A DNA stretch of 64,000 nucleotides from the NCBI GenBank assembly GCA_002269645.1, contig NIVC01001371.1, positions 1 to 64,000 on the forward strand. Reading direction: 5' to 3'. The notes under the pieces are model-generated. The model was not told where the DNA came from and made no database searches. It was given only the letters and a program-made list of their open reading frames with translations. Positions within the stretch are counted from its first letter, which is position 1. Each line of letters opens with the position of its first letter. The position numbers and the translations under genes are program-made. Below, in pieces: positions 10,348-64,000 of this stretch. This stretch comes from Macrostomum lignano. Taxonomy: Eukaryota.

Positions 10348-11620
<1,273 letters not shown>

Positions 11621-20492: not shown

Positions 20493-21690
20493 CTGAATAA
20501 TCAGTGGTAGCTAGGGGTTGGCAGCGGACCCTGAATAATCGGTGGTAGCTAGGGGTTGGCAGCGGACCCTGAATAATCGGTGGTAGCTAGGGGTTGGCAG
20601 CGGACCCTGAATAATCGGTGGTAGCTAGGGGTTGGCAGCGGACCCTGAAAAATCGGTGGTAGCTAGGGGTTTGCAGCGGACCCTGAATAATCAGTGGTAG
20701 CTAGGGGTTGGCAGCGGACCCTGAATAATCAGTGGTAGCTAGTGGTTGGCAGCGGACCCTGAATAATAAGTGGTAGCTAGGGGTTAGCAGCGGACCCTGA
20801 ATAATCAGTGGTAGCTAGGGGTTGGCAGCGGACCCTGAATAATCAGTGGTAGCTAGGGGTTGGCAGCGGACCCTGAATAATCGGTGGTAGCTAGGGGTTG
20901 GCAGCGGACCCTGAATAATCGGTGGTAGCTAGGGGTTGGCAGCGGACCCTGAAAAATCGGTGGTAGCTAGGGGTTTGCAGCGGACCCTGAATAATCAGTG
21001 GTAGCTAGGGGTTGGCAGCGGACCCTGAATAATCGGTGGTAGCTAGGGGTTGGCAGCGGACCCTGAATAATCAGTGGTAGCTAGTGGTTGGCAGCGGACC
21101 CTGAATAATAAGTGGTAGCTAGGGGTTAGCAGCGGACCCTGAATAATCGGTGGTAGCTAGGGGTTGGCAGCGGACCCTGAATAATCAGTGGTAGCTATAG
21201 GGGTTGGCAGCGGACCCTGAATAATCAGTGGTAGCTAGTGGTTGGCAGCGGACCCTGAATAATCAGTGGTAGCTAGGGGTTGGCAGCGGACCCTGAATAA
21301 TCAGTGGTAGCTAGGGGTTGGCAGCGGATCCTGAATAATCGGTGGTAGCTAGGGGTTGGCAGCGGACCCTGAATAATCAGTGGTAGCTAGGGGTTGGCAG
21401 CGGACCCTGAATAATCAGTGGTAGCTAGGGGTTGGCAGCGGACCCTGAATAATCAGTGGTAGCTAGGGGTTGGCAGCGGACCCTGAATAATCAGTGGTAG
21501 CTAGGGGTTGGCAGCGGACCCTGAATAATCAGTGGTAGCTAGTGGTTGGCAGCGGACCCTGAATAATCAGTGGTAGCTAGGGGTTGGCAGCGAACCCTGA
21601 ATAATCGGTGGTAGCTAGGGGTTGGCAGCGGACCCTGGAGAATCGGTGGTAGGGGTTGGCAGCGGACCCTGGAGAATCGGTGGTAGGGCA
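20493..21690. repeat. 38-bp minisatellite, about 31 copies
   Basis: Unit CTGAATAATCGGTGGTAGCTAGGGGTTGGCAGCGGACC. Confidence 0.97.
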
Positions 21691-44600: not shown

Positions 44601-47600
44601 ATCCCGGATGCTTTAGCGCTGTACTCAAGGAGATGCAGCCGACTATACAGCAGCGGGCTACGGATGTGCTCAGGCTGCAGCTGGGGCCCAAGGCCGCCGG
44701 TGTTGGGTGAGTGTTCTAGGCTCAGATTTCCAGAGCTGTTGTGTTCTAACTAGGGTGAGATTTCCAGAGCTATTGTGTTCTAACTAGGGTGAGATTTCCA
44801 GAGCTGTTGTGTTCTAACTAGGGTGAGATTTCCAGAGCTGTTGTGTTCTAACTAGGGTGAGATTTCCAGAGCTGTTGTGTTCTAACTAGGGTGAGATTTC
44901 CAGAGCTGTTGTGTTCTAACTAGGGTGAGATTTCCAGAGCTATTGTGTTCTAACTAGGGTGAGATTTCCAGAGCTGTTGTGTTCTAACTAGGGTGAGATT
45001 TCCAGAGCTGTTGTGTTCTAACTAGGGTGAGATTTCCAGAGCTGTTGTGTTCTAACTAGGGTGAGATTTCCAGAGCTGTTGTGTTCTAACTAGGGTGAGA
45101 TTTCCAGAGCTGTTGTGTTCTAACTAGGGTGAGATTTCCAGGGCTGTTGTGTTCTAACTAGGGTGAGATTTCCAGAGCTGTTGTGTTCTAACTAGGGTGA
45201 GATTTCCAGAGCTGTTGTGTTCTAACTAGGGTGAGATTTCCAGAGCTGTTGTGTTCTAACTAGGGTGAGATTTCCAGAGCTGTTGTGTTCTAACTAGGGT
45301 GAGATTTCCAGAGCTGTTGTGTTCTAACTAGGGTGAGATTTCCAGAGCTGTTGTGTTCTAACTAGGGTGAGAATTTCAGAGATGTTGTGTTCTAACTAGG
45401 GTGAGATTTCCAGAGCTGTTGTGTTCTAACTAGGGTGAGATTTCCAGAGCTGTTGTGTTCTAACTAGGGTGAGATTTCCAGAGCTGTTGTGTTCTAACTA
45501 GGGTGATAATTTCAGAGATGTTGTGTTCTAACTAGGGTGAGATTTCCAGAGCTGTTGTGTTCTAACTAGGGTGAGATTTCCAGAGCTGTTGTGTTCTAAC
45601 TAGGGTGAGAATTTCAGAGATGTCGAGTTCTAGGGTGAGATTTCCAGAGCTGTTGTGTTCTAACTAGGGTGAGATTTCCAGAGCTGTTGTGTTCTAACTA
45701 GGGTGAGATTTCCAGAGCTGTTGTGTTCTAACTAGGGTGAGATTTCCAGAGCTGTTGTGTTCTAACTAGGGTGAGATTTCCAGAGCTGTTGTGTTCTAAC
45801 TAGGGTGAGATTTCCAGAGCTGTTGTGTTCTAACTAGGGTGAGAATTTCAGAGATGTCGAGTTCTAGGGTGAGATTTCCAGAGATTTAGAGTTCTAAGGG
45901 GAGATTTCCAGGAATTTAGAGTTCTGTGATGAGATTTCCAGGATTGTACAGTTCTAGGGTGAGATTTCCAGAGATTTGTAGTTCTATGGTGAGATTTCCA
46001 GGGATGTAGAGTTCTATGGTGAGATTTCCAGGGATGTAGAGTTCTTGGGGGAGATTTCCAGGGATTGTAGACTAATATTCTAGACAAGGCTTTATTGGTG
46101 CTATTTTGAGTGAGACTACTGAGACTTTAAAGAAAGTGTTAAAAAGCAGATTTTTGTCCTGATAATACCAGCGCGTTACCAATATTTGCTAGTAGCCAAA
46201 ACTAACAGCTATCATTGCTGAATTCTCAGCGCCGACTCAGCCTCAGCTTCATCAGCCGCATCGTCATCATTGTATCGCGTATCGCCTCTCCTGTCCCGTC
46301 GCACCCGACTTGGCCAGCTTAGGTAGCGATTAAGTGCTAATCTGCAAGAAAAACACTATTAATTTCCTTGATCTTGTGCGCGTATTTTCTCTGAAAATCG
46401 AATGCTATGTGTACACGGGATTAATAGACATCGCAAATTATCCCAGTTTTAATTTATATTGCAACAAACTTCCTATACACTCTGCATGCCGTCTATTTCT
46501 GAATATTTTTTGGTATTTACGATTTTGCTAATCATACTACTGGACTTTTGCTGCGTCAGTAGTGCAGATTGAATTTTACAATCTATTGTTATAATTGGAA
46601 ATTGAAAAATTATTAATTCATACAGGTCGGATCTTCCCGCATCTGCTGAGACGCCCCAGAAGCAGCAGCAGGTGTCTGGGCCGCGAAGTTCTGCTGCAGC
46701 GACGCCCGCGCCGTTGTCTGCTCGCGGCGGAGTCACCAGACCAGCCGCCGCTGTGGTCCGACGGGCCGCTCCCGCAACCCCCGCCGCCGCCGCTGCTGCA
46801 AACGCCGCCGCGGATGCCGGCGACGGTTCGGACGACTTGCTTAACAGCATCCACATGGCGGCGCTCAATCTGCAGTCCTTCACTCGGACAGCCGAAGACG
46901 CTGACGCGACTGAAAACAAGGCGCCACTTATTGAAGCTCTGCCGGCGCCAACTCCGGTCAGGCCCGCCCAGCTGGCCAATGGCCGCGCCCCAGCCTCTGC
47001 TTTGCAGCCTTCGCGGCAACAGCAACAACAGCAGCCGCCGCTGACTGCTGGTGGACCGCGTCAACAGCAGGCGACTGTCGCGGAGGTGACCTCAACTCCG
47101 TCGCGTTTCCAGCCTGTGCAAAAGCAGCAGCAGCAGCAGCAGCAGCAGGCTCCGCCTGCGCCGCCACCTGCTGCATTACAGTCTACTCTTGGCCAGCCAG
47201 ACTTTGAAGATTTCGACGATGATGAAGAATTATTGGACGACGACGACGAGGATATTGATGGTGAGACAACTCTGGATTGTGTGCTCACCTCTGGCGTTAG
47301 ATGCCTGCGCAGTACATTATATACGAAATAAACTTGCCGTTACACAGCTGTGATTGATCTCCTAGGGTGAGACTTCTCTGAATCTCCTAGGATGAGATTT
47401 CCCCGAATCTCCTAGGGTGAGATTTCTCTGAATCTCCTAGTGTGAGTTTTTTCTGATAAATCTCCTAGGGTGAGATTTGCCTGAATCTCCTAGGGTGATA
47501 TTTTTTTAATCTGCTAGGGTGGGATTTCTCTGATAAAATCTCCTAGGGTTAGATTTCTCTGAATCTCCTAGGGTGGGATTTCTCTGATATTCATAAATCC

Positions 47601-49905
47601 CCTAGGGTGAGATTCCCCTGAATGTTCTAGGGGGAGATTTCTTTGATAAATCTTCTAGGGTGAGATTTCCCTGAATCCTAGTGTGAGATTTCCCTGAATC
47701 TCCTAGAGTAAGATTTCTCTGATAAATCTCCTAGGGTGAGATTTCCCTGAATCCTAGTGTGAGATTTCCCTGAATCTCCTAGAGTAATATTTCTGTGATA
47801 AATCTCCTAGGGTGAGATTTCCCTGAATCTCCTAGGGTGAGATTTCCCCGAATCTCCTAAGGTGAGATTTTTCGGAAACCCCTGTTCTGTTGTGAATGAA
47901 TCTAGGGTATGATTTCGAATCTCTTATGATTCTCCTATGACAGTGTTGAATAGTAACTTCAATGTGTGTTTTAACTACTGTAAGTAGCTAATGTTTGAAA
48001 TCATATCTATCGCATGCATGCAATAATAACATACACAGCGAATTCGCAAATTTGCAGAAATGTCTACGGACGATGCAGTGACTGGAATATTGAAAGAGCT
48101 GTCGAATCACAATCAACGGTAAATTAACTTGTACTTTTATTTTATTTATTTATTTATTTATTTTATTTCTATCCTTTCCACTTCAGGCACGAGCAGCGAA
48201 TGAGTTCTATGCAGCGGCTGGTCCGAATGGTCCGTGACAACTCGGTAGACAGCTGGGATGAGAACTTCAAGACCGTGCTGCTGATCCTGCTGGAAACGCT
48301 GGGAGATAATGAGGTCAGTGTGCTCATTTATGTGCTGTTGTGTGCCGGGGTTTGGTAATTAAGTTGAAATTACTGATTCAGAGTATCACACTCTAGGTTG
48401 TGTTATAGCTTTCTTACTGTTGTATGATCATTTCCTGGGTCATAGTATCACTTCGTGGGTCATAGAATCACTTCCCGAGTCATAGTATCACTTCCCGAGT
48501 CATAGTATCACTTCCCGAGTCATAGTATCACTTCCCGAGTCATAGTATCGCTTCCCGAGTCATAGTATCACTTCCCGAGTCATAGTATCACTTCTCGAGT
48601 CATAGTATCACTTCCCGAGTCATAGTATCACTTCCCGAGTCATAGTATCACTTCCCGAGTCATAGTATCACTTCGTGGGTCATAGAATCACTTCCCAAGT
48701 CATAGTATCACTTCCCGAGTCATAGTATCACTTCCCGAGTCATAGTATCGCTTCCCGAGTCATAGTATCACTTCCCGAGTCATAGTATCACTTCTCGAGT
48801 CATAGTATCACTTCCCGAGTCATAGTATCACTTCCCGAGTCATAGTATCACTTCCCGAGTCATAGTATCACTTCCCGAGTCATAGTATCACTTCTCGAGT
48901 CATAGTATCACTTCCCAAGTCATAGCATCACTTCCCGAGTCATAGTATCACTTCCCGAGTCATAGTATCACTTCCCGAGTCATAGTATCACTTCCCGAGT
49001 CATAGTATCACTTCCCGAGTCATAGTATCACTTCCCGAGTCATAGTATCACTTCCCGAGTCATAGTATCACTTCTCGAGTCATAGTATCACTTCCCAAGT
49101 CATAGTATCACTTCTCGAGTCATAGTATCACTTCCCGAGTCATAGTATCACTTCCCGAGTCATAGTATCACTTCCCGAGTCATAGTATCACTTCCCGAGT
49201 CATAGTATCGCTTCCCGAGTCATAGTATCACTTTCTGAGTCATAGTATTGCTAAATAAGTCAGAATCACTTCCTGGGTCATAGTATCACTTGATGAGCCA
49301 TAGCAGCACATTCTCAGTCGCTATTAATCCCCCACTACCCACCACAGGCAGACATCCGCGCCCTGGCGCTGACGGTGCTGCAGGAGCTGATCAGGGCGCA
49401 GCCCCGCCGCCTATCCAACTACACCGAGCTGACCCTGTTAAAAATTCTCGAAGCCCACCGAGACACCGACAAGTTGGTGGCCAAAGCGGCCGAGGATTGC
49501 GCCAAGCACGTGGCCGCCCACCTGCCCGGCGATGTCTGCCTTCGCGTCCTGACTCCGCTGGTGTCCGGCGCCGACCCCGGCCTGGCCCTGGCCGCCGTAA
49601 AGATGCAGATGCGAGTGGTGCAAGAGTGCGAGCCCCGTGCCGTGGAGGCCGCCCTGCCCGAGCTGTGCCCAGGCCTGGTGCGCTGCTGCGATCACGCCGA
49701 GTCTCAAATACGCAAGGCCGCCATCTTCTGTCTAGTGCAGATGTACATGAAAGTTGGCGAGACGCTGCTGTTGCATCTCAAAGACATGAGCAGCACGAAA
49801 CGGCGCCTGCTGCAGCTGTACATCTGCAAGGCCCGCGTTGGCACCGCCCAGGACGCCGGCGGCGGCGGTGGCGCCGGCGGGGTTGCCCTGCCTCCAGTCA
49901 GCTGA
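32654..49905 (+). CDS. CLASP: CLIP-associating protein (CLASP/Orbit/MAST), 16-exon model of about 1380 aa
   Basis: join(32654..33158,33717..33842,36190..36276,36957..37018,37429..37782,39113..39235,39832..40164,40577..40888,41422..41463,43607..43924,44297..44706,46230..46322,46626..47260,48058..48118,48187..48313,49348..49905); all junctions are GT-AG and phase-consistent. Motifs: GSIDEEGFLAAF, DWEKRVDAMKQLRSLL, DLRSQVVREACITIAHL (TOG2), SGIP, DDASETSSVCS, ELRRVCDIFAKMF (TOG3), LKELSNHN, WDENFKTVLLILLETLGD, RKAAIFCLV (C-terminal domain). The acceptor at 40577 versus 40544 and the 42-nt exon are less certain. Confidence 0.9.
33350..33440. repeat. Short degenerate 21-bp repeat, CLASP intron 1
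   Basis: About 5 diverged units around GCCGCTAAT. Confidence 0.6.
34148..34620. repeat. 21-bp minisatellite, CLASP intron 2, about 22 copies
   Basis: Unit ATATCCGATCTCTCATCTACC. Confidence 0.95.
35290..35896. repeat. 42-bp (39-bp variant) minisatellite, CLASP intron 2, about 14-15 copies
   Basis: Unit TGGCGCCAAAATCAGCATGTTCAAAGTGTACATGTGAGTGGC. Confidence 0.96.
37105..37372. repeat. 22-bp minisatellite, CLASP intron 4, about 12 copies
   Basis: Unit GGTCCTTCATTAGCCTCCCACT/CA. Confidence 0.95.
37815..38045. repeat. 33-bp minisatellite, CLASP intron 5, about 7 copies
   Basis: Unit GAGAGAATCGGATTGCGAATCTCACCCATCGAT. Confidence 0.93.
39355..39775. repeat. 32-bp minisatellite, CLASP intron 6, about 13 copies
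   Basis: Unit AAATCTGGCGCCAAACTGGGAATCG(A/G)GTG(TTA/CCG). Confidence 0.95.
40170..40510. repeat. 45-bp minisatellite, CLASP intron 7, about 7 copies
   Basis: Unit GCATCACATCCTCTCACTGGTTGCAGGGGTGAGACTCCGGTTATT, starting directly at the splice donor. Confidence 0.93.
41628..42060. repeat. 35-bp minisatellite, CLASP intron 9, about 12 copies
   Basis: Unit GATTAGCAATCCATTTTGATCCTTCACATGGGATA. Confidence 0.95.
42550..43516. repeat. About 21-25-bp minisatellite with a higher-order duplication of about 300 bp, CLASP intron 9
   Basis: Unit AAGAAATCGCCCCTGAACTATCTTC. Block about 42563-42860 is repeated at about 42864-43160. Confidence 0.9.
43955..44170. repeat. About 32-bp minisatellite, CLASP intron 10, about 6 copies
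   Basis: Unit GGGGAGAATACTAATGGGGAAAATTGGGTATT. Confidence 0.9.
44721..46065. repeat. 34-bp minisatellite (about 33 copies) grading into 24-bp units, CLASP intron 11
   Basis: Unit GTGAGATTTCCAGAGCTGTTGTGTTCTAACTAGG; period read from 44755 to 44789. Confidence 0.97.
47360..47875. repeat. Degenerate about 24-bp minisatellite, CLASP intron 13
   Basis: Unit CTCCTAGGGTGAGATTTCCCTGAAT, sharing the CTAGGGTGAGATTTC core with the intron 11 array. Confidence 0.9.
48440..49290. repeat. 20-bp minisatellite, CLASP intron 15, about 40 copies
   Basis: Unit CATAGTATCACTTCCCGAGT. Confidence 0.97.
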
Positions 49906-50522: not shown

Positions 50523-51404
50523 TACCTCTTCTTAGCTCTCTTCGCTCGCGACTTCACAACAACACCTAGTAGGCATCTGTACTTGTAAATGTGGCTTTTA
50601 TAATTGTAAAATTGCTCGCGCGCTTTGGTGACAGTTGCAGCCATCAGTCCCGATCGATGCCGCACAGACGAATAAGCACATATAGTAGATGTAAATCTAG
50701 CCATTTTAAAGTCATCATCGCGAGATCGTCAATCGCATCAAACGCCAATTGTACTAGTAGTATCTGCCGGATCGCATCGCATTCATTAGTTAATGCTCAT
50801 TTCACAGTGTTTTAATTAAACGTATTTGTCAACAGGCACACAGCACTGTTGCCATTTAGTCAGCTTACTGCAGCTTTCAATACACTGGCGCCCCCCCCCT
50901 CCGATCATCAGTCCATCCATCCTCTGTTCAATCTGTTCATTTCATTTTTCTATTGCCCACGATTAATTAAGCATAACATTTGTCGGATTTTATCGTATTA
51001 TTAAGCGCGATTGCGTGTTGTTTTCTTTCGAATCGATTTTCCGTCACTTTTTGTTCACTGATTTACTTGTTAAAATGTGGATTTCGTTCTTCTTTAACAC
51101 CTGTTGCTGCTGCTGCCTTCTTGATCGCCTTGGCAAGCTGTAACTGCAGACCGTTTGATTTGTTCCCACTTTTATAGTTTATTTGCAACCAATATGGATT
51201 TCTAGGCGGCTGGCCTAGCGTTGTTAAATAATAACTTATTATAAATCATACTATTGTGACATTATTGACTGTCTCATGCTTGCCACTGCGGCTTGTTTGT
51301 ATTATTTGTGACTTTGCCTTGCCTTCATTCTACAGCTCACCTGTGCTGCTGCTGTTAGTGTTCTGATTATCTGAATCAGATAATCTCTTCTTCGATCCCC
51401 AGTT

Positions 51405-52378
51405 CCTGAGCCATGCTCCCAGATCCCAGTGCCTGGGCCAGCCTCTCAGATCCCCAGTTACTGGGCCAGCCTCCCAGATCCTCAGTTGCTGGGCCAGCCT
51501 CCCCGATCCTCAGTTGCTAAGCCAGCCTCCCAGATCCTCAGTTGCTGGGCCAGCCTCCCAGATCCTCAGCTGCTGGGCCAGCCTCCCAGATCCTCAGCTG
51601 CTGGGCCAGCCTCCCAGATCCTCAGCTGCTGGGCCAGCCTCCCAGATCCTCAGCTGCTGGGCCAGCCTCCCAGATCCTCAGTTGCTGGGCCAGCCTCCCA
51701 GATCCTCAGCTGCTGGGCCAGCCTCCCAGATCCTCAGCTGCTGGGCCAGCCTCCCAGATCCTCAGTTGCTGGGCCAGCCTCCCAGATCCTCAGTTGCTGG
51801 GCCAGCCTCCCAGATCCTCAGTTGCTGGGCCACCCTCCCAGATCCTCAGTTGCTGGGCCAGCCTCCCAGATCCTCAGCTGCTGGGCCAGCCTCCCAGATC
51901 CTCAGCTGCTGGGCCAGCCTCCCAGATCCTCAGTTGCTGGGCAAGCCTCCCAGATCCCCAGTTGCTGGGCCAGCCTCCCAGATCCTCAGTTGCTGGGCCA
52001 GCCTCCCAATTCCTCAGCTGCTGGGCCAGCCTCCCAGATCCTCAGTTGCTGAGCCAGCCTCCCAGATCCTCAGTTGCTGTGCCAGCCTCCCAGATCCCCA
52101 GTTGCTGAGCCAGCCTCCCAGATCCTCAGTTGCTGGGCCAGCCTCCCAGATCCCAAGTTGCTGGGCCAGCCTCCCAGATCCTCAGCTGCTGGGCCAGCCT
52201 CCCAGATCCTCAGCTGCTGGGCCAGCCTCCCAGATCCTCAGCTGCTGGGCCAGCCTCCCAGATCCCCAGTTGCTGAGCCAGCCTCCCAGATCCTCAGTTG
52301 CTGGGCCAGCCTCCCAGATCCTCAGTTGCTGGACCAGCCTCCCAGATCCCCAGTTGCTGAGCCAGCCTCCCAGATCCT
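51405..52378. repeat. 28-bp minisatellite, about 34 copies
   Basis: Unit GGGCCAGCCTCCCAGATCCTCAG(T/C)TGCT. Confidence 0.97.
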
Positions 52379-56127: not shown

Positions 56128-58876
56128 TCAGTAGTAGCCTTTGTCCAGCATCACCAGCTCGTTCCGTTTCGGAGGCTGCGGCTTTCGCAGAACTTGTCCA
56201 GATGGGGTGGTCGCTTCTTGAAGCTGCCGTAGTTGCTGCTGCTGCTGTTGCTGCTGCTGTTGCCTTCCAGCCTGTCTGAGCGAGGCTTCCAGAAAAGTTC
56301 TCTGCCGTCGCAGCTGCACAAGATTAGCATTTTGGCATAGTAACTTTGAAATCATCATTCAAACTGAGAATCATCATCATTGAGACTGAGAATCATCATC
56401 ATCATTGAGACTGAGAGTCATCATCATTGAGACTGAGAATCATCACAACTGAGACTGAGAATCATCATCATTGAGACTGAGAGTCATCACAACTGAGACT
56501 GAGAATCATCATCATTGAGACTGAGAGTCATCATCATTGAGACTGAGAATCATCACAACTGAGACTGAGAATCATCATCATTGAGACTGAGAGTCATCAT
56601 CATTGAGACTGAGAATCATCACAACTGAGACTGAGAATCATCATCATTGAGACTGAGAGTCATCATCATTGAGACTGAGAATCATCACAACTGAGACTGA
56701 GAATCATCATCATTGAGACTGAGAATCATCACAACTGAGACTGAGAATCATCATCATTGAGACTGAGAATCATCACAACTGAGACTGAGAATCATCATCA
56801 TTGAGACTGAGAATCATCACAACTGAGACTGAGAATCATCATCATTGAGACTGAGAGTCATCATCATTGAGACTGAGAATCATCACAACTGAGACTGAGA
56901 ATCATCATCATTGAGACTGAGAGTCATCATCATTGAGACTGAGATTAATCATCATTGAGACTGAGATTAATCATCATTGAGACTGAGAATCAGCACTATT
57001 GAGACTGAGAATCATCATCTCCCCTCCCCTCACCTGTGTCGGAGGCTCCTCGTAGTCCTGGCTGACAACATAGTGAAAAGTTTTTTCCCGGCCCAACCCA
57101 GCGGATCGGAACGACCGTCCAGCGCTGTCCCTGGTGGACATCGGCGTCGGCGGCGTCGGCTGCTGTCCACCAGCCGCTGCGATGCGGCCAGCTTTGAGGT
57201 CCACAATCATGGGCGACTGTTCGTTGAAGACCCGGTTCAGATTCAGGTCTCTGTTGGCCAGCTCCAGTTTGTACTTTGTCAGCTCTCGCTGCAGTCGCTC
57301 GCATTCCTCCTCCAGTTGGCGCTCCGTCTGTTTTTTTTGGTTGTTTGTGAAGGTATTTGACAGGGTAGCGGCTGACCCAGTGAACAACTCAGGAATTGTA
57401 GCGGGTGACCCAGTGAACAACTTAGGAATGGTAGCGGCTGACCCAGTGGACAACTTAGGAATGGTAGCGGCTGAACCAGTGGACAACTCAGGAATGGTAG
57501 CGGCTGACCCAGTGAACAATTGGGGAAGGGTAGCGGGTGACTCAGTGAACAACTGGGGAGGGTAGCGGGTGACTCAGTGAACAACTGGGGAGGGTAGCGG
57601 GTGACCCAGTGAACAACTGGGGAGGGTAGCGGGTGACTCAGTGAACAACTGGGGAGGGTAGCGGTGACTCAGTGAACAACTGGGAAGGGTAGCGGGTGAC
57701 TCAGTGAACAACTGGGGAGGGTAGCGAGTGACTCAGTGAACAACTGGGGAGGGTAGCGGGTGACTCAGTGAACAACTGGGGAGGGTAGCGGGCGACTCAG
57801 TGAACAACTGGGGAGGGTAGCGGTGACTCAGTGAACAACTGGGGAGGGTAGCGGGTGACTCAGTGAACAACTGGGGAGGGTAGCGGGCGACTCAGTGAAC
57901 AACTGGGGAGGGTAGCGGTGACTCAGTGAACAACTGGGGAGGGTAGCGGGTGACCCAGTGAACAACTGGGGAGGTAGGGGCGGACCCAGTGAACAACGTA
58001 GGAAGGGTAGCGGTGATCAGTGAGCTTGCGTTTAGAGTGAACTTTTACATATGCTAATGCTCGATCGAGCATCGAATTCCAGAAAAAAGGCAATTCAGAT
58101 ATCGAACTGGAGCAGACCTGACTCTGGGCCGCCCTGTCCCCTCGGCCGCCCAGCGGCTGCACCAGCCCCTCGGATAGGCGCCTGTTGGCGTCGCGCTTCA
58201 TGGTTCTCAGCTCGTTCTCAATCTGCTTGTTCTTCAGCCGGAGCGCCTCGGCCGCCTTTGCCTGCTCCTCGGCGTACGCCTGCAGCTCGCTGCACTCTTT
58301 GTTCCACTTCTGTGCCCTCTTCTTGGCCGAGTCCAGCTCCTTGGACAGCTCGTCGGCCACTCGCTCTCGCTCGGCCAGCTTGTAGGACAGCTTGGCCAGC
58401 TTCTCGCGCAGTCCGGCGTTCTCCTCCTCTACCAGGCGGCTCCGTTCGCCTTTCTCGGACAGCTCGAGACTGACGCTACTGCGCATGCTGTCGATCTCTC
58501 GGCCAGCCTCTTCTAGCATCTTCTTCATCTGGTCGCGGCTCTCCCGCAGCCTGGCAAGCTGCGCGTCTCGGTCGGCCAGTTTCCGTTCGAGTTTCGTCCG
58601 CTGTTCGTCGAATTCCCGCCGGCGTTTAGCCAGGTCATCGTCCAGACGCTTCGCCGTTTCTTCCCTGTCGCGAGCCAGCAGCTCCTGGGCCTCCAGACGC
58701 TCGGCGGCGTCCTTCCGAGTGAGTTCGAGCTCGCTCTCGTAGGCCGAGCGGACGGCTGCCAGCTCGCACTCGCGCTCGTGCTGCCGTTTGAACAGCATGT
58801 GCACCACCTGGGTGAGCTCGGCGATCTTCTTCGAGACCCGGTACTCGAAGCTCAGCCTCGGCTCGTTTAGATTCAT
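56128..58876 (-). CDS. FAM184: FAM184-family coiled-coil protein, 3 coding exons, about 412 aa
   Basis: complement(join(56128..56313,57034..57327,58118..58876)) with phase-0 introns. N-terminal FEYRVSKKIAELTQVVHMLF and C-terminal KYKLELANRDLNLNRVFN match the two conserved FAM184 blocks. An acceptor-like ACTCAG lies about 10 nt upstream of the ATG. Confidence 0.8.
56362..57018. repeat. About 22-bp minisatellite, FAM184 intron 2
   Basis: Units GAGACTGAGA(A/G)TCATCATCATT and GAGACTGAGAATCATCACAACT. Confidence 0.95.
57360..58010. repeat. 32/33-bp minisatellite, FAM184 intron 1, about 20 copies
   Basis: Unit GGGTAGCGGGTGACTCAGTGAACAACTGGGGA. Confidence 0.95.
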
Positions 58877-59344
58877 GCCGAGGCAACCTGAGTGCTGAGT
58901 GCAGTTTGAAGTTGCACTGCAGTCTTGCATACACAGTGTAGCTGTCTGCTGCATTAATATTCACAACTGAGAGCGCCGTCCTCTCCTCTCTGAAACATCA
59001 ATAGGTGGCGACCCTTGCCTGCAGTGCAACAATAGCCTGTCTGCATCTCCAGAATTAATTGTACGCGCTTCACGTCGCATCGCAACCCCCCTCCCCTCCG
59101 CGTCTTTCACGAAGGCCTCTTGCGCAGCTCGTAGCACTTAACAATTGAGAAAGCTGGCCATTTCTTATCGCAGATTTTTCAGAGCCGACGAAAGGGCTTG
59201 AGAATTTCGCTCGCCATTTCTGGCGGCTACTGGCGAGGGGCGTCTACAGTGTCTCTCTGTTTTTTTAATTGCCAATTGGCTACTTAAACAAATAAGCACA
59301 TCGAGAGACATATATTTCCCCGAGTCTCTGCAGGTGCGTAGAAA

Positions 59345-59822: not shown

Positions 59823-60131
59823 ACACGTAAAACATTTCCCAATAGGAATCTGGATATTAAATTATAACAAAGAAGAAATATTTTACTGCAGCACCCGGAA
59901 AACAATTGCTTTCGGTGTCGGGGCTTCGGACAATCCAAATGGATTTCTATTTAGACTGTTCTTTTGCTAATATGAGATACATAAAGTTCGATTGCTTATT
60001 TTTCAAGTTTCAAAGTGCTCATTTAGGAGAAAAACGAAACTCGTTGGAATGTAGGAGAGCTGTGAAGTCTCTCTCGACTGTCTCTCGCCGCAGCAGCCCG
60101 CCTCATCCGAGCTATTGAGTAATCCAGATTG

Positions 60132-61166
60132 TTATTTTCCAATAAACTCGGACAGCCGTTTCTGAGCGCTCGGTTGGCTTCGCCTGTCCAGATAGGCGGA
60201 CACCCGTTTACGGAACTCGTTCACAATGCGCCTCAGCGCTGAGTCGGCGCCTTCGTTGTTGCTGTCGGCTCCATCCCGGACGAGGAGCACCACGGGCAGC
60301 TCCGCGCGGTTCAGGCCCGCTTTGGACTGCACCGAGCTGTCCGAACCATCCGGGTCCGCCAGCAGCCCATCTGGAGTCGTTTGAAAGGAATGGCTGATAT
60401 TGTAGCGTTTGAATAGTAGTGTTAGATATTAGTTAGTAGTATATTGATTTTCATTTATGATGTGCCACTTAAGACCGGCAACTTTTATCTGCATTAGCAC
60501 AATTTTAAAATAATTCTAATATCTAATTCTAACCTGTTAATCTGTTTGTTAGATTTGTTTATCTATTTGTTAGATTTGTTTATGTGATTGTTAAATTTGT
60601 TAATTTGATTGTTATATATGTTTATCTAGTTGTTAGATTTGTTTGTCTGGTTGTTAGATTTGTTCATTCGGTTGTTAGATTTGTTTATCAGGTTGTTAAA
60701 TTAGTTTATCTGAATGTTAAATTAGTTTATGTAATTTTTAGATTTGTTTATCTGATTGTTTGATTTATTAATCTGGTTGTTAGATTTTTTAATATGATTG
60801 TTAAATTTGTTTATCTGAATGTTAAATTTGTTTACGTAATTTTTAGATTTGTTTATCTAATCCGTGTATTTGTTATTTGTTTGAATGGTAGTAGTTAAGA
60901 AAATTCTCAGCACAAAAAATGGATAGAGTTAAAAAGATTCCTGATACTAAAAACAACAACACGAGATTAAAATACTCGTACGAGCCTGTGTCTACCTGGA
61001 ATGTCACCTTGGTACTGGGCGGCGCTTATCAGCTGCAGCAGCAGGTAAAATCCCAGAACTAAAGCCAGTAGGGAGCTTCGCGTGGACACTGAAAAATGAA
61101 TGGAAATTTAATTACAAATTTTAACTTTTCGGGATCAACACAGACCGACACAGCGGCTCACTTACT
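60132..61166 (-). CDS. Neuropeptide prohormone (predicted LSEFI-amide), 3 exons, 110 aa
   Basis: complement(join(60132..60370,60996..61088,61166)). The ATG is formed as A|TG across a 77-nt intron (CCA|gtaagt...tttttcag|TG); the second intron is CCAG|gtaga...ctccag|AT. The protein has a signal peptide (MSTRSSLLALVLGFYLLLQLISA), an acidic spacer, sites RR, RKR, RR and KR, and the C-terminus KRLSEFIGK*. Confidence 0.8.
60535..60860. repeat. Degenerate about 17-bp AT-rich repeat in prohormone intron 2
   Basis: Recurrent GTTAGATTTGTTTATCT-like units. Confidence 0.75.
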
Positions 61167-61267
61167 GGTTAGGATTTGGAAATTTCGGTAGTAGAAAGAT
61201 CAGCAGTTGGTCTTCTCTTTTGATTCAACTCCGATAGATGCCGAAGTCGAAGTCTGGAAAGCCTTCA

Positions 61268-61306
61268 TTTATATTTACGATTCCTCAGCTACACTGATTG
61301 GCCAAT
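61268..61306 (-). promoter_or_regulatory. Candidate core promoter of the prohormone gene (TATA plus CCAAT boxes)
   Basis: Minus-strand TATAAA at 61268-61273 and CCAAT at 61297-61301, with a mirror CCAAT at 61302-61306. The TATA is about 100 nt upstream of the split start codon. Confidence 0.5.
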
Positions 61307-61854
61307 GCAGCTTTGTGTCTATCCAATAGAGTTAATGTCCTCATACAGTTACTGCATACGGCTTCACAACCGCCCACACCTGTTGAACTGGCCAAATAAG
61401 GACTTGTACAAGACGATCTTTCTTTAGCACAGGGTTTGTCGGAAAAATAAATTAACAAACAGGACACAAAAGCATTGTTTGTGCTGGGCTGTCTATGCCT
61501 AAATGTATTAATTATATGTATTTTAGAGTCACGTGACAACACACCAAGGTAAATCGAGTTAAATTTCGGTATTAGAATAAAATTACTTGAACTAATTAAT
61601 AGAGGCACAACATGTCAGTTCCTCGAAAACAGTCAATTTAAAATGTACTTCAGTATAAGAACGAGTGTACTTTATAAGTGTACTGTAATACGAGCGACAT
61701 CTCAGTTATAAAATAATGTCATTAGGAAAACTCCATTCGTAAGAGAACGGAGAGCTACAGTGAACCCGAACACCGGACAGCAAACTCAGCTCAAACTCCC
61801 CCTATACGTTACACAGCCGTCTTCTTCAATAGGAACGTTGCTTTGTTTGCCCAC

Positions 61855-62290
61855 CTCACTCCTCACCCACCTCACTCCTCACCCGCCTCACTCCTCACTC
61901 AACTCACTCCTCACCCACCTCACTCCTCACCCGCCTCACTCCTCACCCGCCTCACTCCTCACCCACCTCACTCCTCACCCACCTCACTCCTCACCCACCT
62001 CACTCTTCACCCGACTCACTCCTCACTCAACTCACTCCTCACCCACCTCACTCCTCACCCACCTCACTCCTCACCCACCTCACTCCTCACCCACCTCACT
62101 CCTCACCCACCTCACTCCTCACCCACCTCACTCCTCACTCGCCTCACTCCTCACCCACCTCACGCTTCACCCGTCTCACTCCTCACCCACCTCACTCCTC
62201 ACTCGCCTCACTCCTCACCCACCTCACGCTTCACCCGTCTCACTCCTCACCCACCTCACTCCTCTCCCACCTCACTCCTCACCCGCCTCA
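61855..62290. repeat. 16-bp minisatellite just downstream of the NUDT9-H stop, about 26 copies
   Basis: Unit CTCACTCCTCACCCAC. Confidence 0.95.
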
Positions 62291-62317
62291 CTCTGCACCA
62301 ATCTCGTGCCCCAGCCC

Positions 62318-64000
62318 TCAAAAGTACGCTCCGTGCTGCTGCGCCACCAGCCGCAGCAGAGTGTTGTGCGACTGTCGCATCAGCCTCCGATTGGCCACGT
62401 CGATCCAGGCAACGCGCTCGCCGCTGCCGCCCTCGCGCAGGCACTCGGTCACAACGTCGTCTTCAAAATTATAATTGAAGTGTTCGTGCAAATTAACCAA
62501 GTCGGTCTCCAGCCAGGCGTTGTCGCCGTTCACCCTGTCGTCGAGCAAGCCGGTGTACACTGTGCTGCAGGCCGCGGCGGTGACCGCCTCCTGCTGAATG
62601 TGCAGCCGTTTGGCGCCCAGCCTGCCAGCGTCCAGAGCCTCGATGCGCTCCCGCAGCCAGGCCCGCAGCAGGTTCTGCAGGCCGCACTGGCCAACTGTCG
62701 ACGAAGAAGCCGATGAAGCTGACACGGAGGCTGGACCGATACAGCTCGGCAGGCAGTGCTTGACGTGATACCACGGCAGCTGCATGCCGCCCCGACGGTC
62801 CAGCACCGCCGCAACCTGCAGCACCGGCCGTCCAGCCTTCTTGGCGATGTTCTGACGATCGTCTCGTCGCCAACGAGTGACGGCCAAGTGGAGGCAGTGG
62901 TTGGGACCCCACAGCGGCAGCCGGTTGCGGTCCGGTGCCCCCGGCTTGCCGCTGGGGTTCATCGGGCGGCCGGCCTCGTCAGTCACGTAGCTGGGTGGCG
63001 GCGGCGGTGGGTGGGGTTCCAACTTCTTGTTGAAATTTGCTTCCAATTTCCGCTTCAAATTACTGACTTAGTTTTAATTAACTCAAAGAGGCTCATGTAT
63101 ATTCTATTTATTGATATATTTTGTTTAACTCTGACATCGTCTAAATTCAAAACGAATGACAAATGAGCACTAAAGAAACAGTCGGTTAAAAATATTAAAT
63201 TAGCTGATTCCTGTAAAAGTGAAACTGAGTAGCTGCATCTTCTTTTGCTAGCGATGGTGTTGATATTTCTGATTATAAAATTTAATAACTTCAAATGGTA
63301 ATCCATCGACACTTCATTCTCAATTATTATAATTGTGAAATACATTCACAATGTAGTCACTACATTTTCTACCATTGTGCATTTAAATTTCGCCGCTATG
63401 CACAAATTTGGTCTTCGCCAAAAATTTTCAAATGCCCCTGGGACGAAAGTGTCCGATTGCCCCTCGGAAGATATGTTCCAGTAAGTCTGGGACGTAATGT
63501 CCGATTTCCCTGGGACAAAGTGTCACTGTACCACTCGGACGAGATGTCCGATTTCCCTGGGACAAAGTGTCACTGTACCACTCGGGACGAAATGTCCGAT
63601 TTCCCTGGGACAAAGTGTCACTGTACCACTCGGGACGAAATGTCCGATTTCCCTGGGACAAAGTGTCAATGTACCACTCGGGACGAAATGTCTTACCGCC
63701 CAGCATGCGAGCCCCTGTGGAACCCGCTGCTCGAGTCGAATCCGTTAAAAGCTCCGGCCGCCTCGGCTCTGTCCGGCCAGTCGGAGCTGCTCCAGACTTC
63801 AGGCATCTCGGCCACTCTGGCCGAGCCGGAGTCCAGCTGGTACGGCACTAGCCTGGCCAGCTGGTGGTGCTGCAGTTTGCCGCGCCAAACTCGCGGCCGC
63901 TGCTCCTCCTCGGTCGAGTCCTCGCTGCCCAGATGGACGCTCAAGTCGTCGTCCACCGCGACCGGCTGCGATGTGGTCCGGCGATCGCTGCGAGAGCCTC
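62318..64000 (-). CDS. C-terminal NUDT9-homology domain, probably of a TRPM2-like channel (5' part outside the window)
   Basis: Exons >64000..63697 and 63062..62318 join in phase 2 (CG|T). Motifs HQLARLVPY, GRPMNPSG, WGPNH, YTGLLDDRVNGDNAWLET and the C-terminal SHNTLLRLVAQQHGAYF* parallel NUDT9/TRPM2. The frame stays open to the window edge. Confidence 0.8.
63435..63692. repeat. 48-bp minisatellite starting at the splice donor of the NUDT9-H intron, about 5 copies
   Basis: Unit CGGGACGAAATGTCCGATTTCCCTGGGACAAAGTGTCACTGTACCACT. Confidence 0.93.

What the first reader, a model, noticed from the sequence alone, without database searches (positions are those of the whole stretch)
60132..61306. 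Hidden neuropeptide gene: intron-split start codon, predicted LSEFI-amide (EFLamide/TRH-like)
Seen: CCAAT and TATA boxes, a 5' exon ending in the A of ATG, a 93-nt exon encoding a clean signal peptide, and a terminal exon. Protein: MSTRSSLLALVLGFYLLLQLISAAQYQGDIPDGLLADPDGSDSSVQSKAGLNRAELPVVLLVRDGADSNNEGADSALRR-IVNEF-RKR-VSAYLD-RR-SQPSAQ-KR-LSEFI-GK*. Known: convertases cut at KR/RR, carboxypeptidase E trims K, and C-terminal Gly becomes an amide; crustacean GSEFLamide and annelid FSEFLGamide belong to the protostome TRH-type family. Inference: a single-copy LSEFIamide that may be a flatworm-type TRH-receptor ligand, plus possible co-released peptides (IVNEF, VSAYLD). ORF-based annotation would miss this gene because the start codon is interrupted.
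Basis: partly seen in the sequence, partly recalled or inferred. Interest (0 to 1): 0.8.

Follow-up and report, generated by a model that had tools for sequence, protein, structure and literature searches.

The report
Unannotated flatworm fulicin/EFLamide-type neuropeptide gene
A small three-exon gene on the minus strand of this Macrostomum lignano (flatworm) contig very probably encodes a secreted prohormone whose last peptide, LSEFI-amide, closely resembles the mollusc fulicin / annelid EFLGamide / arthropod EFLamide peptides that act on TRH-type receptors; it is a likely new member of a known family, so far supported only by sequence analysis.

Summary
The window is Macrostomum lignano contig NIVC01001371.1:1-64000. 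The model is far beyond chance. Both coding exons independently show this genome's codon bias only in the model's frame (0/5000 shuffles). The signal-peptide start and the dibasic...G-K-stop tail are each unique in the window. A verified neighbouring gene has the same kinds of intron. Spliced-leader trans-splicing would be out of frame, so the split ATG is required. Family link: KR-LSEFIG-K* differs by one residue from mollusc KR-FSEFIG-KR (Ennucula; Deroceras 'fulicin'). Two decayed units (IVNEF, VSAYLD) precede it. Fulicin/EFLGa/EFLa peptides are the accepted protostome TRH-type ligands. Alignment statistics are only modest (p about 0.01) and cannot exclude an F[V/L/I]amide-type or convergent peptide. 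No transcript, peptide, orthologue or receptor data could be obtained. A TRH-type precursor is already annotated in a polyclad flatworm. Verdict: probably a real gene and a new member of a known kind. Interest is moderate.

The parts
61297..61306 (-). Palindromic double CCAAT box (ATTGGCCAAT). It is a putative NF-Y-type promoter element about 30 nt upstream of the TATA box.
   Evidence: the 10-mer occurs only twice on both strands of the window. Its function is inferred, not shown.
61267..61273 (-). TATAAAT, the putative TATA box. The only upstream ATG (61268-61266) overlaps it and so probably lies upstream of the transcription start.
   Evidence: TATAAAT occurs 0.24 times per kb per strand, so on its own it is weak evidence.
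61166..61245 (-). Exon 1: the 5' UTR plus the A of the start codon. The 5' end (about 61245) is inferred from the TATA position. The 3' end is exact: ...CCTAACCA|GTAAGTGA. After splicing, the start context is AACCATGT (A at -3, CC at -2/-1).
   Evidence: The donor matches the M. lignano cis-donor motif GT[G/A]AG (PMC8629364). There is no ATG inside the inferred exon.
61089..61165 (-). Intron 1, 77 nt, GTAAGT...TTTTTCAG, GC 0.36.
   Evidence: A verified intron of exactly 77 nt with the same site types (CAT|GTAAGT...CTTTAG|) lies in the Gbeta5-like gene at 25370-25294.
60996..61088 (-). Exon 2, 93 nt. It holds the TG of the start codon, then the signal peptide (residues 1-24, coded by A61166 plus 61088-61018; predicted cleavage ISAA|QYQ) and QYQGDIP(G/). 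An alternative in-frame donor, CAAG|GTGACA, would end the exon at 61008.
   Evidence: +12.8 bits in the model frame only; the only AG|TG-type signal-peptide-like start in the window.
60371..60995 (-). Intron 2, 625 nt, GC 0.26. About half of it is a 21-nt minisatellite (60535-60858, about 15 copies).
   Evidence: Introns that hold minisatellites are normal in this window, for example the last intron of the Gbeta5-like gene.
60132..60370 (-). Coding part of exon 3 (phase-1 acceptor CTCCAG|AT). It encodes the acidic spacer and the processed tail, ending in TAA at 60134-60132.
   Evidence: +15.1 bits in the model frame only; the only ORF tail of this kind in the window.
60204..60233 (-). RR-IVNEF-RKR: the first unit, not amidated. 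Compare fulicin FNEFV-amide and nemertean FNEFLP-amide.
60180..60203 (-). VSAYLD-RR: a decayed unit that BLASTP aligns with FSEFLG of the Tubulanus FSE/EFLGa precursor.
60135..60161 (-). KR-LSEFI-G-K: the predicted bioactive peptide LSEFI-NH2. The peptide is coded at 60155-60141, the amidation Gly at 60140-60138 and the C-terminal Lys at 60137-60135.
   Evidence: [SNG]EF[LIVMP]x0-2G[KR] occurs once in all six frames of the window; mollusc KR-FSEFIG-KR.
59882..60131 (-). Putative 3' UTR. It has only variant poly(A) signals: AATAAG at 60000-59995 and AGTAAA at 59887-59882. There is no AATAAA or ATTAAA within 430 nt.
   Evidence: The 3' end is not defined.

Best explanation
This is a genuine, small, stand-alone protein-coding gene of Macrostomum lignano (minus strand, about 61245 to about 59900).

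Gene structure:
- It is most likely transcribed from a TATA/CCAAT promoter.
- It is cis-spliced so that the last base of a non-coding first exon (A, 61166) joins TG at the start of exon 2 to form the only AUG of the mRNA, in a good AACCAUG context.

Product and processing:
- The 110-aa product (106 aa if the alternative donor is used) is a prepropeptide.
- A 24-residue signal peptide directs it into the secretory pathway.
- Prohormone convertases cut at RR78-79, RKR85-87, RR94-95 and KR101-102.
- A carboxypeptidase E-type enzyme trims the basic residues, including the C-terminal Lys.
- Peptidylglycine alpha-amidating monooxygenase converts the exposed Gly into an amide, giving LSEFI-NH2. The by-products are IVNEF, VSAYLD, SQPSAQ and a 53-residue acidic N-terminal peptide.

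Family:
- LSEFI-NH2 is most likely the flatworm representative of the fulicin / EFLGamide / EFLamide family (x-[S/N/A/G]-E-F-[L/V/I]-amide), the protostome TRH-type peptides, and would act on a TRH-receptor-type GPCR.
- The precursor looks like a decayed multi-copy array reduced to one amidated copy.

Shown: the sequence elements, the codon bias and frame consistency, the uniqueness of the signal-peptide start and the processing tail, and the motif identity with mollusc peptides.
Inferred: transcription, splicing, processing, amidation, neuronal expression and the receptor.

My estimates: real expressed gene about 0.85; given that, a processed amidated peptide about 0.8; given that, a fulicin/EFLa-type peptide by descent about 0.6. 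The confidence given (0.6) is for a real gene encoding a processed, amidated secretory peptide precursor with fulicin/EFLa-type as the leading family assignment. The full chain including family membership by descent is about 0.4.
For: - Gene model: exact splice signals and frame. The donor and acceptor motifs are those reported for this species and those seen in a verified gene of the same window, including a 77-nt intron and an intron filled by a minisatellite.
- Codon bias in the model frame only, in both exons independently, with GC3 as in real exons and 0/5000 shuffles reaching the score. Exon/intron GC contrast.
- Spliced-leader trans-splicing onto the exon 2 acceptor would put the leader's ATG out of frame (MCPREAPYWL*). 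The ORF has no internal Met, so the cis exon ending in A is required.
- The signal-peptide-like start is unique of its type in the window. The dibasic-rich tail ending G-K-stop is unique among 658 ORFs. The exons are single-copy and not repeat-derived.
- Family, closest peptides: KR-LSEFIG-K* against KR-FSEFIG-KR in the bivalve Ennucula and in the Deroceras 'fulicin' precursor, which itself ends ...GFIGK-stop.
- Family, related units: nemertean FSE/EFLGa units KR-F[S/N/G]EFL..G-KR, including the 5-mer FSEFP-amide. Oyster fulicins (F/Y)S(E/D)FL-amide were detected by mass spectrometry, and fulicin = EFLGa = TRH orthologue according to PMC8398477 and PMC11890989.
- Both Phe residues of the propeptide sit in [S/N]EF units next to cleavage sites; P(at least 2) is 2.5e-5 by residue shuffling.
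- BLASTP against the Tubulanus FSE precursor gives E = 2e-4 over 48 residues. With K/R positions kept fixed, p = 0.007-0.04.
- A single EFLa copy in the last exon is the norm in insects.
- Flatworm GPCRs with phylogenetic similarity to TRH receptors are reported (PMC6114109), and a polyclad expresses a TRH-type proneuropeptide in neurons.
Against: - There is no transcript, peptide or orthologue evidence of any kind.
- The precursor has no true homologue among 1.84 billion representative proteins. The only two hits are spurious. There is no Pfam family.
- Donor 2 (GTAGAC) lacks the conserved +5 G, as does its alternative (GTGACA).
- There is no canonical poly(A) signal within 430 nt.
- Position 1 of the peptide is Leu, whereas it is aromatic (F/Y/W) in nearly all the spiralian units seen (a few Capitella units start with Q or S).
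- Only one unit has an amidation signal.
- Alignment scores against an F[V/L/I]amide precursor are about as good as against FSE precursors, so the family assignment rests on a 5-6 residue motif.
- No planarian or schistosome prohormone in the Collins 2010 catalogue carries the motif, so conservation within flatworms is unshown.
- The statistical patterns were defined post hoc.
Confidence: 0.6

Rival explanations
1. It is a real secretory prohormone gene, but LSEFI-amide is not a fulicin/EFLa (TRH-type) peptide by descent. It would be either an F[V/L/I]amide / Mytilus-inhibitory-peptide-type peptide or a lineage-specific peptide that resembles the family by convergence.
For: - FLamide, FVamide and FIamide peptides are ubiquitous in lophotrochozoans. 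Members such as REFV-amide and (T)REFL-amide share the E-F-[V/L] end.
- Smith-Waterman scores with K/R positions fixed are as good against the Tubulanus F[V/L/I]amide precursor (p 0.009-0.027) as against FSE precursors.
- Position 1 is Leu, not aromatic.
- Five-residue motifs can converge.
Against: - The Ser-Glu-Phe core and the register (the peptide starts right after KR and is five residues long) match fulicin/FSE units. F[V/L/I]amide and MIP units typically have Pro or a basic residue before Phe.
- A second [S/N]EF unit and a VSAYL unit are present.
- In oyster and Capitella both peptide types come from one gene, so the two 'families' are not cleanly separate. No PxF[V/I]G unit exists near this locus.
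Confidence: 0.2
2. It is not a functional gene. The arrangement would be a chance combination picked out by a pattern-seeking reader, or a decaying relic (pseudogene) of a former multi-copy neuropeptide gene that is no longer expressed.
For: - There is no expression or homology evidence.
- Two of three peptide units are degenerate.
- Donor 2 is non-consensus and there is no canonical poly(A) signal.
- The split start codon is a rare architecture that a reader could construct after the fact, since any A|GT upstream would do.
Against: - Codon bias is frame-specific in both exons, and the ORF is intact through 110 codons.
- The donor is strong, and the AACC context precedes exactly the A that is needed.
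- The signal peptide is intact, and the tail is unique in the window.
- A relic would not be expected to keep frame-specific GC3 and two compatible phase-1 junctions.
Confidence: 0.12
3. It is a real gene for a secreted protein or peptide that is not neuronal, for example a gland, adhesive or reproductive secretion. The dibasic sites would be furin-type or incidental, and there would be no signalling function.
For: M. lignano expresses many small, lineage-specific secreted proteins. Nothing here shows the cell type. This rests on general knowledge; no tool result bears on it directly.
Against: Four dibasic sites are concentrated in the last 33 residues, and a C-terminal Gly-Lys follows a family-typical pentapeptide. 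That is the signature of processing in the regulated secretory pathway, not of a structural secretion.
Confidence: 0.06

Closest known systems
Molluscan fulicin-type precursors (Achatina fulicin Phe-D-Asn-Glu-Phe-Val-NH2; Deroceras reticulatum 'fulicin' ARS01371.1; Ennucula tenuis precursor; oyster Cragi-fulicin)
   Same: - They yield pentapeptide amides x-x-E-F-[V/L/I]-NH2 that are released from KR...G-[KR] sites.
- FSEFI-amide of Ennucula and Deroceras differs from LSEFI-amide only at residue 1.
- The Deroceras precursor also ends in ...FIGK-stop.
- The layout is the same: signal peptide, acidic spacer, then peptide units in the C-terminal part.
   Different: - The mollusc precursors carry many amidated copies and have an aromatic residue at position 1. 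The candidate has Leu at position 1, one amidated copy and two decayed units.
- In oyster the fulicin exon is an alternative 3' exon of the PxFV/I-amide (MIP) gene. No such exon is present here.
- The D-amino acid at position 2 is known for fulicin (PMC8398477). It is unknown here.
Annelid/nemertean EFLGamide ('FSE peptide', TRH-type) precursors (Platynereis FSEFLG-amide; nemertean FSEFL(x)-amides)
   Same: - The S-E-F core directly follows KR.
- Variants FNEFLP-amide and the 5-mer FSEFP-amide exist.
- BLASTP aligns 48 residues of the candidate's tail, including VSAYLD and LSEFIG, with Tubulanus units at E = 2e-4.
- The Platynereis peptide activates the TRH-receptor orthologue (cited).
   Different: These are arrays of 5 to more than 20 near-identical copies. 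They usually have one or two extra residues before the amide (FSEFLG-, FSEFLAP-amide), Leu rather than Ile, and Phe at position 1.
Arthropod EFLamide (crustacean xGSEFL-amide; insect EFLa, e.g. Pyrrhocoris TVGTEFLG)
   Same: - The C-terminus is S/T-E-F-L-amide.
- In insects there is a single copy, encoded in a short last exon and flanked by two cleavage sites.
- It is the ligand of a TRH-type receptor (cited).
   Different: - The arthropod peptides are extended at the N-terminus and end in Leu, not Ile.
- In Heteroptera and Locusta the exon is an alternative 3' exon of Prohormone-4. Here the gene has its own signal-peptide exon.
Lophotrochozoan F[V/L/I]amide / Mytilus inhibitory peptide (PxFV/I-amide) precursors
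   Same: They have a C-terminal Phe-[V/L/I]-amide, and some members are xEFV- or xEFL-amide. Alignment scores are comparable.
   Different: Pro or a basic residue typically precedes Phe, there is no Ser-Glu-Phe core, and the arrays are long. The Platynereis FLamide receptor is a different (rhodopsin-gamma) GPCR.
Polyclad flatworm TRH-type proneuropeptides (Prostheceraeus crozieri 'TRH', 'TRH2'; Piovani et al. 2023)
   Same: It is in the same phylum and is annotated as TRH-type. TRH2 is expressed in ciliomotor neurons of the larva.
   Different: The sequences are not held in the library, so no comparison was possible. Macrostomorpha is a different, early-branching lineage of flatworms.

Membership tests
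Fulicin / EFLGamide / EFLamide (protostome TRH-type) neuropeptide precursors | An N-terminal signal peptide on a short precursor | tested here: met
   The n-region is MSTRSS (+1), the 15-residue h-region is LLALVLGFYLLLQLI, and SAA|Q satisfies the -3/-1 rule. This was a crude rule-based test. SignalP was not available.
Fulicin / EFLGamide / EFLamide (protostome TRH-type) neuropeptide precursors | A core motif x-[S/N/A/G/T]-E-F-[L/V/I] that starts directly after a dibasic site | tested here: met
   KR-LSEFI matches FSEFI, FSEFV, YSEFL, WSEFL and FTEFL (Ennucula), FSEFI and YSEFL (Deroceras fulicin), F[S/N/G]EFL (nemerteans, Capitella) and the stated protostome core E-[L/F]-[L/F/V].
Fulicin / EFLGamide / EFLamide (protostome TRH-type) neuropeptide precursors | A C-terminal amidation signal (Gly followed by basic residue(s)) | tested here: met
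   The precursor ends ...LSEFI-G-K-stop. The same end...FIGK-stop, is found in the Deroceras fulicin precursor. Amidation itself was not shown.
Fulicin / EFLGamide / EFLamide (protostome TRH-type) neuropeptide precursors | An aromatic residue (F/Y/W) at position 1 of the spiralian pentapeptide | tested here: not met
   The candidate has Leu. A few Capitella units have Q or S at this position, and arthropods have G, so this feature is typical rather than strictly defining.
Fulicin / EFLGamide / EFLamide (protostome TRH-type) neuropeptide precursors | Several tandem copies of the unit (spiralians); a single copy in insects | tested here: inconclusive
   There is one amidated unit plus two degenerate units (IVNEF, VSAYLD) with the same spacing. 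P(at least 2 [S/N]EF units) is 2.5e-5 by shuffling, but the pattern was defined post hoc.
Fulicin / EFLGamide / EFLamide (protostome TRH-type) neuropeptide precursors | Statistically supported sequence similarity of the precursor to family members | tested here: inconclusive
   BLASTP gives E = 2e-4 (Tubulanus) and 0.04 (Lineus). Shuffles that keep K/R positions give p = 0.007-0.04, but a comparable p of 0.009-0.027 is obtained against an F[V/L/I]amide precursor. phmmer against 1.84e9 proteins found no true relative.
Fulicin / EFLGamide / EFLamide (protostome TRH-type) neuropeptide precursors | The peptide activates a TRH-receptor-type GPCR. This is the criterion by which the family was tied to TRH. 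| not testable with these tools
   It needs a receptor assay. The literature gives only this: the Platynereis EFLGa and C. elegans TRH-1 peptides activate TRH-receptor orthologues (cited).
Fulicin / EFLGamide / EFLamide (protostome TRH-type) neuropeptide precursors | A cognate TRH-type receptor gene in the same genome | not tested
Fasciola has GPCRs with phylogenetic similarity to TRH receptors (PMC6114109).
Fulicin / EFLGamide / EFLamide (protostome TRH-type) neuropeptide precursors | Orthologues in related species (other Macrostomum species, polyclads) | not testable with these tools
   The polyclad TRH sequences are not held. Other Macrostomum genomes are not in any searchable collection. 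The duplicated M. lignano contigs could not be reached.
F[V/L/I]amide / Mytilus inhibitory peptide (PxFV/I-amide) precursors | Arrays of short peptides ending F-[V/L/I]-amide, with Pro or a basic residue two to three positions before Phe | tested here: not met
   The FI-amide end is present. But there is no Pro or basic residue before Phe and no array, and no P.F[VIL]G occurs anywhere in the six frames of the window.
Deuterostome TRH precursors (repeats of Q-H-P-G or Q-[YW]-P-G between dibasic sites) | Repeated Gln-x-Pro-Gly units that give pGlu-x-Pro-amide | tested here: not met
   There is no QxPG unit in the 110-aa sequence. Any relation to TRH would be only through the receptor family.
Armadillo-repeat proteins (suggested by hit P0002) | A match to the Arm/HEAT repeat profile | tested here: not met
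   There is no Arm or related Pfam hit even at E <= 10. The phmmer E-value of 1.4e-5 came from one 26-residue stretch matched against four repeats.

The most novel reading that the evidence does not exclude
This would be the first TRH-type (fulicin/EFLamide-type) ligand gene identified in Macrostomorpha. That would mean the ancestral bilaterian TRH-type system survives, as a precursor reduced to a single amidated copy, in a transgenic, RNAi-amenable flatworm model, whereas planarians and parasitic flatworms are thought to have lost it. The peptide might also carry a D-residue at position 2, as fulicin does. The gene would have escaped cataloguing because its start codon is split by an intron and its product is only 110 aa.
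Probability: 0.4. Interest if true: 0.55.

Novelty: new member of a known kind. Interest (0 to 1): 0.45.

Why it matters
TRH-type signalling is one of the ancient bilaterian peptide systems. Its protostome ligands (fulicin, EFLGamide, EFLamide, nematode ELF-amides) were recognised only through receptor deorphanisation.

For flatworms the picture is patchy. TRH-like receptors were noted in Fasciola with 'ligand not yet reported' (2018). A TRH-type precursor is annotated in one polyclad larva (2023). Planarians and parasites are said to have lost many ancestral peptides (2026 review).

A candidate ligand gene in Macrostomum lignano, a model with transgenesis and RNAi, would let the function of this system be tested in a simple flatworm nervous system. 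It would also date the loss within the phylum.

Finally, it is a practical example of a short gene with an intron-split start codon, which ORF-based and some ab initio pipelines miss.

Tried and rejected
- Homology searches. The whole precursor gave no hit in the word-indexed search. The full phmmer scan of 1.84e9 representatives gave only two hits. One is a bacterial repeat adhesin and the other an ARM-repeat protein. Both were rejected as compositional or repeat-inflated, and Pfam shows no Arm match even at E <= 10.
- Reaching paralogous or duplicate copies to test exon conservation. The spliced protein is not accepted by the look-up of encoding contigs. The upstream ORF 62318-63058, the coiled-coil exon 57923-58954 and the exon 3 ORF are not on record. 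Neither the upstream ORF nor the coiled-coil exon is in the protein collection. The collection's silence on the precursor is therefore uninformative. The one duplicate that was reached (L001 against L002, around the CD20-like gene) is 99.06% identical, so it would have given little power anyway.
- Spliced-leader trans-splicing as the source of the start codon. Rejected: the leader ends in ATG, but it would be out of frame on the exon 2 acceptor. A possible trans-acceptor inside exon 1 (TTTCCAG|, about 61252) would, by my reading of the sequence, give only an 18-codon upstream ORF.
- Upstream in-frame ATG (61268). It runs into TGA.
- Alternative acceptor for exon 3 (TATCAG|CC). Its phase does not fit either donor (my reading of the sequence).
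- An MIP/PxFV-amide alternative exon, as in oyster and Capitella. None was found.
- Known RNA families and tRNAs in the window: none.
- The locus as a dispersed repeat: no; only the intronic minisatellite matches itself.
- Literature. No paper contains 'EFIamide' or 'SEFIamide'. No matching motif was found in the planarian/schistosome prohormone catalogue, in a schistosome neuropeptide paper or in the Taenia npp supplement. Koziol 2016 and McVeigh 2009, which covered Macrostomum, are not held, so I cannot exclude that the precursor was already listed there.
Full report
**What is there**

- A palindromic ATTGGCCAAT lies at 61306-61297 and TATAAAT at 61273-61267.
- A stretch ending ...CCTAACCA at 61166 is followed by GTAAGTGA.
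- A 77-nt interval ends in TTTTTCAG.
- A 93-nt segment (61088-60996) begins with TG and is followed by GTAGAC.
- A 625-nt AT-rich interval ends in CTCCAG.
- A 239-nt segment (60370-60132) ends in TAA.

**Whose genome**

A contiguous ORF of the window (3714-4616, a CD20-like protein) is on record on contig NIVC01001371.1 of assembly GCA_002269645.1, at the same coordinates and strand as in the window. The window is therefore bases 1-64000 of that contig.
- NIVC... is the Mlig_3_7 assembly of the free-living flatworm Macrostomum lignano. That identification is my own knowledge of the accession; it fits the Mlig_3_7 literature read and the taxonomy.
- The window is full of minisatellites (49 TRF rows).
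- It contains recognisable metazoan exons: Gbeta5-like, CLASP-like, a mitochondrial carrier and a coiled-coil protein.

**Is the gene model more than a construction?**

Several independent tests say yes.
- Codon usage. I trained a codon table on 1233 codons of exons of this same window that Pfam or the record's annotation verify.
  - The predicted CDS scores +32.5 bits against its own base composition in the model frame, and -0.5 to -55 bits in the other five frames.
  - Exon 2 alone (+12.8) and exon 3 alone (+15.1) are each positive only in the frame that the splice junctions impose.
  - GC by codon position (0.66/0.44/0.71) matches the training exons (0.64/0.43/0.72).
  - The per-codon score (0.30) lies within the range of the training exons (0.13-0.51), and none of 5000 shuffles reaches the observed score.
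- Base composition. The exons are GC islands (0.55, 0.62) in AT-rich introns (0.36, 0.26).
- Signal peptide. A crude test finds six candidate starts on both strands of the window. The others are a microsatellite read-through, transmembrane segments and AT-rich noise. Only this one is of the AG|TG type.
- Processing tail. Of 658 stop-to-stop ORFs of at least 40 residues, exactly one ends in dibasic-x(3-15)-Gly-[Lys/Arg]-stop. It is this one, with four dibasic sites in its last 40 residues. Shuffles that keep local composition give 0.015 such tails per window.
- Splice signals. They fit the species: cis donors GT[G/A]AG and acceptors CAG (PMC8629364).
  - The Gbeta5-like gene in the same window uses GTAAGT twice and CAG|GTGTGA once.
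  - It has an intron of exactly 77 nt, and its last intron of about 1 kb holds a minisatellite. The candidate's introns are therefore ordinary for this locus.
- Start codon context. The A supplied by exon 1 is preceded by ACC, so the reconstituted start is AACCAUG. The only upstream ATG overlaps the TATA box and runs into a stop.
- Copy number. The exons are single-copy in the window.
- The pattern definitions were made after the fact, so the individual p-values should be read as indicative. They are, however, independent of one another and all point the same way.

**Why the split start codon is needed**

About 30% of M. lignano genes receive a 35-nt spliced leader that ends in ATG.
- Placed on the exon 2 acceptor, that ATG would read MCPREAPYWL-stop.
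- The precursor frame has no internal Met.
- Only cis-splicing of an exon ending in A gives the ORF. A strong donor in cis upstream of an acceptor is also what prevents trans-splicing.

**Details that need amending**

- A second donor 12 nt upstream (CAAG|GTGACA) is in the same phase and is at least as close to consensus. It would delete GDIP, giving a 106-aa product.
- Neither donor has the usual G at +5.
- No AATAAA or ATTAAA lies within 430 nt of the stop. Only AATAAG (60000) and AGTAAA (59887) are present.

**What it encodes**

- The signal peptide is MSTRSSLLALVLGFYLLLQLISAA, with cleavage before QYQ.
- An acidic spacer of 53 residues follows.
- The tail is RR-IVNEF-RKR-VSAYLD-RR-SQPSAQ-KR-LSEFI-G-K-stop.
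- By the established pathway (prohormone convertases at dibasic sites, carboxypeptidase E trimming, amidation of an exposed C-terminal Gly by PAM), the end product would be LSEFI-NH2. This step is inferred, not shown.

**Family**

Database homology is absent, as is usual for short, fast-evolving precursors. The informative comparison came from published precursor collections.
- Nemertean 'EFLGamide/FSE peptide/TRH' precursors are arrays of KR-F[S/N/G]EFL(x)G-KR. They include FNEFLP-amide and the five-residue FSEFP-amide.
- The bivalve Ennucula tenuis encodes FSEFV-, FSEFI-, YSEFL-, WSEFL- and FTEFL-amide.
- The slug Deroceras 'fulicin' precursor contains KR-FSEFIG-KR and YSEFLG units and ends in ...GFIGK-stop.
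- Lottia has YLEFV-, YAEFV- and YLEFI-amide.
- LSEFI-amide therefore differs from a known mollusc peptide at one position, with the same flanks and the same register.
- The two other units resemble decayed copies. IVNEF compares with fulicin FNEFV-amide. VSAYLD is aligned by BLASTP to FSEFLG (E = 2e-4 against Tubulanus).
- Both phenylalanines of the propeptide are in [S/N]-E-F next to cleavage sites (2.5e-5 by residue shuffling).
- The literature treats fulicin, annelid EFLGamide, arthropod EFLamide and nematode ELF-amides as one protostome family with the core E-[L/F]-[L/F/V]. Its annelid and nematode members activate TRH-receptor orthologues (PMC8398477, PMC11890989, PMC7294237).
- A single copy in a short last exon is the insect condition.

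**Limits of the family claim**

- With the positions of K and R held fixed, Smith-Waterman scores against FSE precursors are only modestly unusual (p = 0.007-0.04). One precursor of the separate F[V/L/I]amide family scores about as well (p = 0.009-0.027).
- Position 1 is Leu, whereas it is aromatic in nearly all the spiralian units seen.
- In oyster and Capitella the fulicin/EFLGa exon is an alternative 3' exon of the PxFV/I-amide gene. No such exon exists here, so the candidate is a stand-alone gene.
- The defining functional criterion, activation of a TRH-type receptor, cannot be tested here. I also could not search this genome for the receptor.
- I therefore file it as a probable member (about 0.6, given a real amidated peptide), not as an established one.

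**Novelty**

- McVeigh et al. 2018 noted TRH-receptor-like GPCRs in Fasciola with the ligand 'not yet reported in flatworms'.
- Piovani et al. 2023 annotated TRH-type proneuropeptides in a polyclad larva.
- A 2026 review states that planarians and parasitic flatworms lost many ancestral peptides.
- I found no report for Macrostomum. However, two papers that mined Macrostomum data (McVeigh 2009, Koziol 2016) are not held.
- The gene is absent from the protein collection used here, but so are its neighbours that are clearly genuine. 'Hidden' therefore cannot be verified.
- The result is a probable new member of a known family in a useful model organism. It is moderately interesting and not surprising in kind.

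**Overall**

It is sharpened (fulicin-type; a decayed array; an alternative donor) and tempered (not the first flatworm candidate; family and function unproven).
- The decisive tests are split reads in existing RNA-seq, conservation in other Macrostomum genomes, peptidomics for LSEFI-NH2 and a receptor assay.

Noticed in passing
window 1-64000: The window equals NIVC01001371.1:1-64000 of assembly GCA_002269645.1 (Macrostomum lignano). At least two other contigs carry the same 300-aa CD20-like gene. One of them, NIVC01004016.1, is 99.06% identical over 6.9 kb, with 16 gaps. It is therefore a recent duplicate or haplotype, which fits the duplicated large chromosome of the DV1 line.
   Followed up: partly
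window, 49 TRF rows, e.g. 10368-11565, 17503-18357, 20493-21686, 44716-45911, 51394-52378: The density of minisatellites is extraordinary: units of 16-79 nt in arrays of 0.2-1.3 kb, plus (CTGT)n of 1.2 kb and (CTGC)n. Most sit in introns or between genes and create long spurious ORFs. The same 20-nt unit (GTGACCAACTGATTGACTGG) forms two arrays, at 17503-18357 and at 24165-24680. The second lies in the last intron of the Gbeta5-like gene.
   Followed up: partly
window 23493-25955 (-): A Gbeta5-like G-protein beta subunit gene (Pfam WD40_Gbeta, E = 5.6e-74 for the last exon). Its exons are at about 25.9, 25.4, 25.1-25.3 and 23.5-24.05 kb. The junctions I read were GTAAGT (twice), CAG|GTGTGA, a 77-nt intron (25370-25294) and a last intron of about 1 kb that holds a minisatellite.
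   Followed up: partly
window 37384-49905 (+): Exons of a CLASP/TOG-domain protein (CLASP_N at 37.4-37.9 kb; HEAT/TOG-like exons at 44.3-44.7 and 49.4-49.9 kb), separated by repeat-filled introns. A poly-Gln/Ala-rich exon at 46.7-47.3 kb may belong to the same gene.
   Followed up: no
window 56974-58954 (-): A coiled-coil protein gene lies immediately downstream of the candidate on the same strand. Its exons end near 58169 and resume near 57342, and the 32-nt minisatellite at 57362-58023 lies in the intron between them. Despite its clear coding character, it is not in the protein collection.
   Followed up: partly
window 62318-63058 (-): A 246-codon ORF about 1 kb upstream of the candidate on the same strand, with protein-like sequence in its C-terminal half. 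It has no Pfam family and no homologue in the collection. Its status is unknown. Between it and the candidate's promoter lies a 16-nt repeat array (61850-62293).
   Followed up: partly
window 15842-16366 (+) and 3714-4616 (-): A mitochondrial carrier exon (Mito_carr, E = 1.4e-22), and a single-exon CD20/MS4A-like gene with a Gln-rich tail. The latter is the only gene of the window that I found on record.
   Followed up: no
window 61252-61258 (-): A TTTCCAG| that matches the species' trans-splice acceptor motif lies inside the inferred exon 1, about 15 nt downstream of the TATA box. A spliced leader added there would create an 18-codon upstream ORF. This is probably irrelevant, but it could be checked with SL-read data.
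   Followed up: no
precursor residues 57-82 (window about 60193-60270, -): The stretch PVVLLVRDGADSNNEGADSAL resembles the armadillo-repeat consensus IPPLVALVRDGxDAQKExAAxAL of an unrelated protein (phmmer E = 1.4e-5, summed over four repeats). Pfam gives no Arm match even at E <= 10, so I regard the resemblance as chance.
   Followed up: yes
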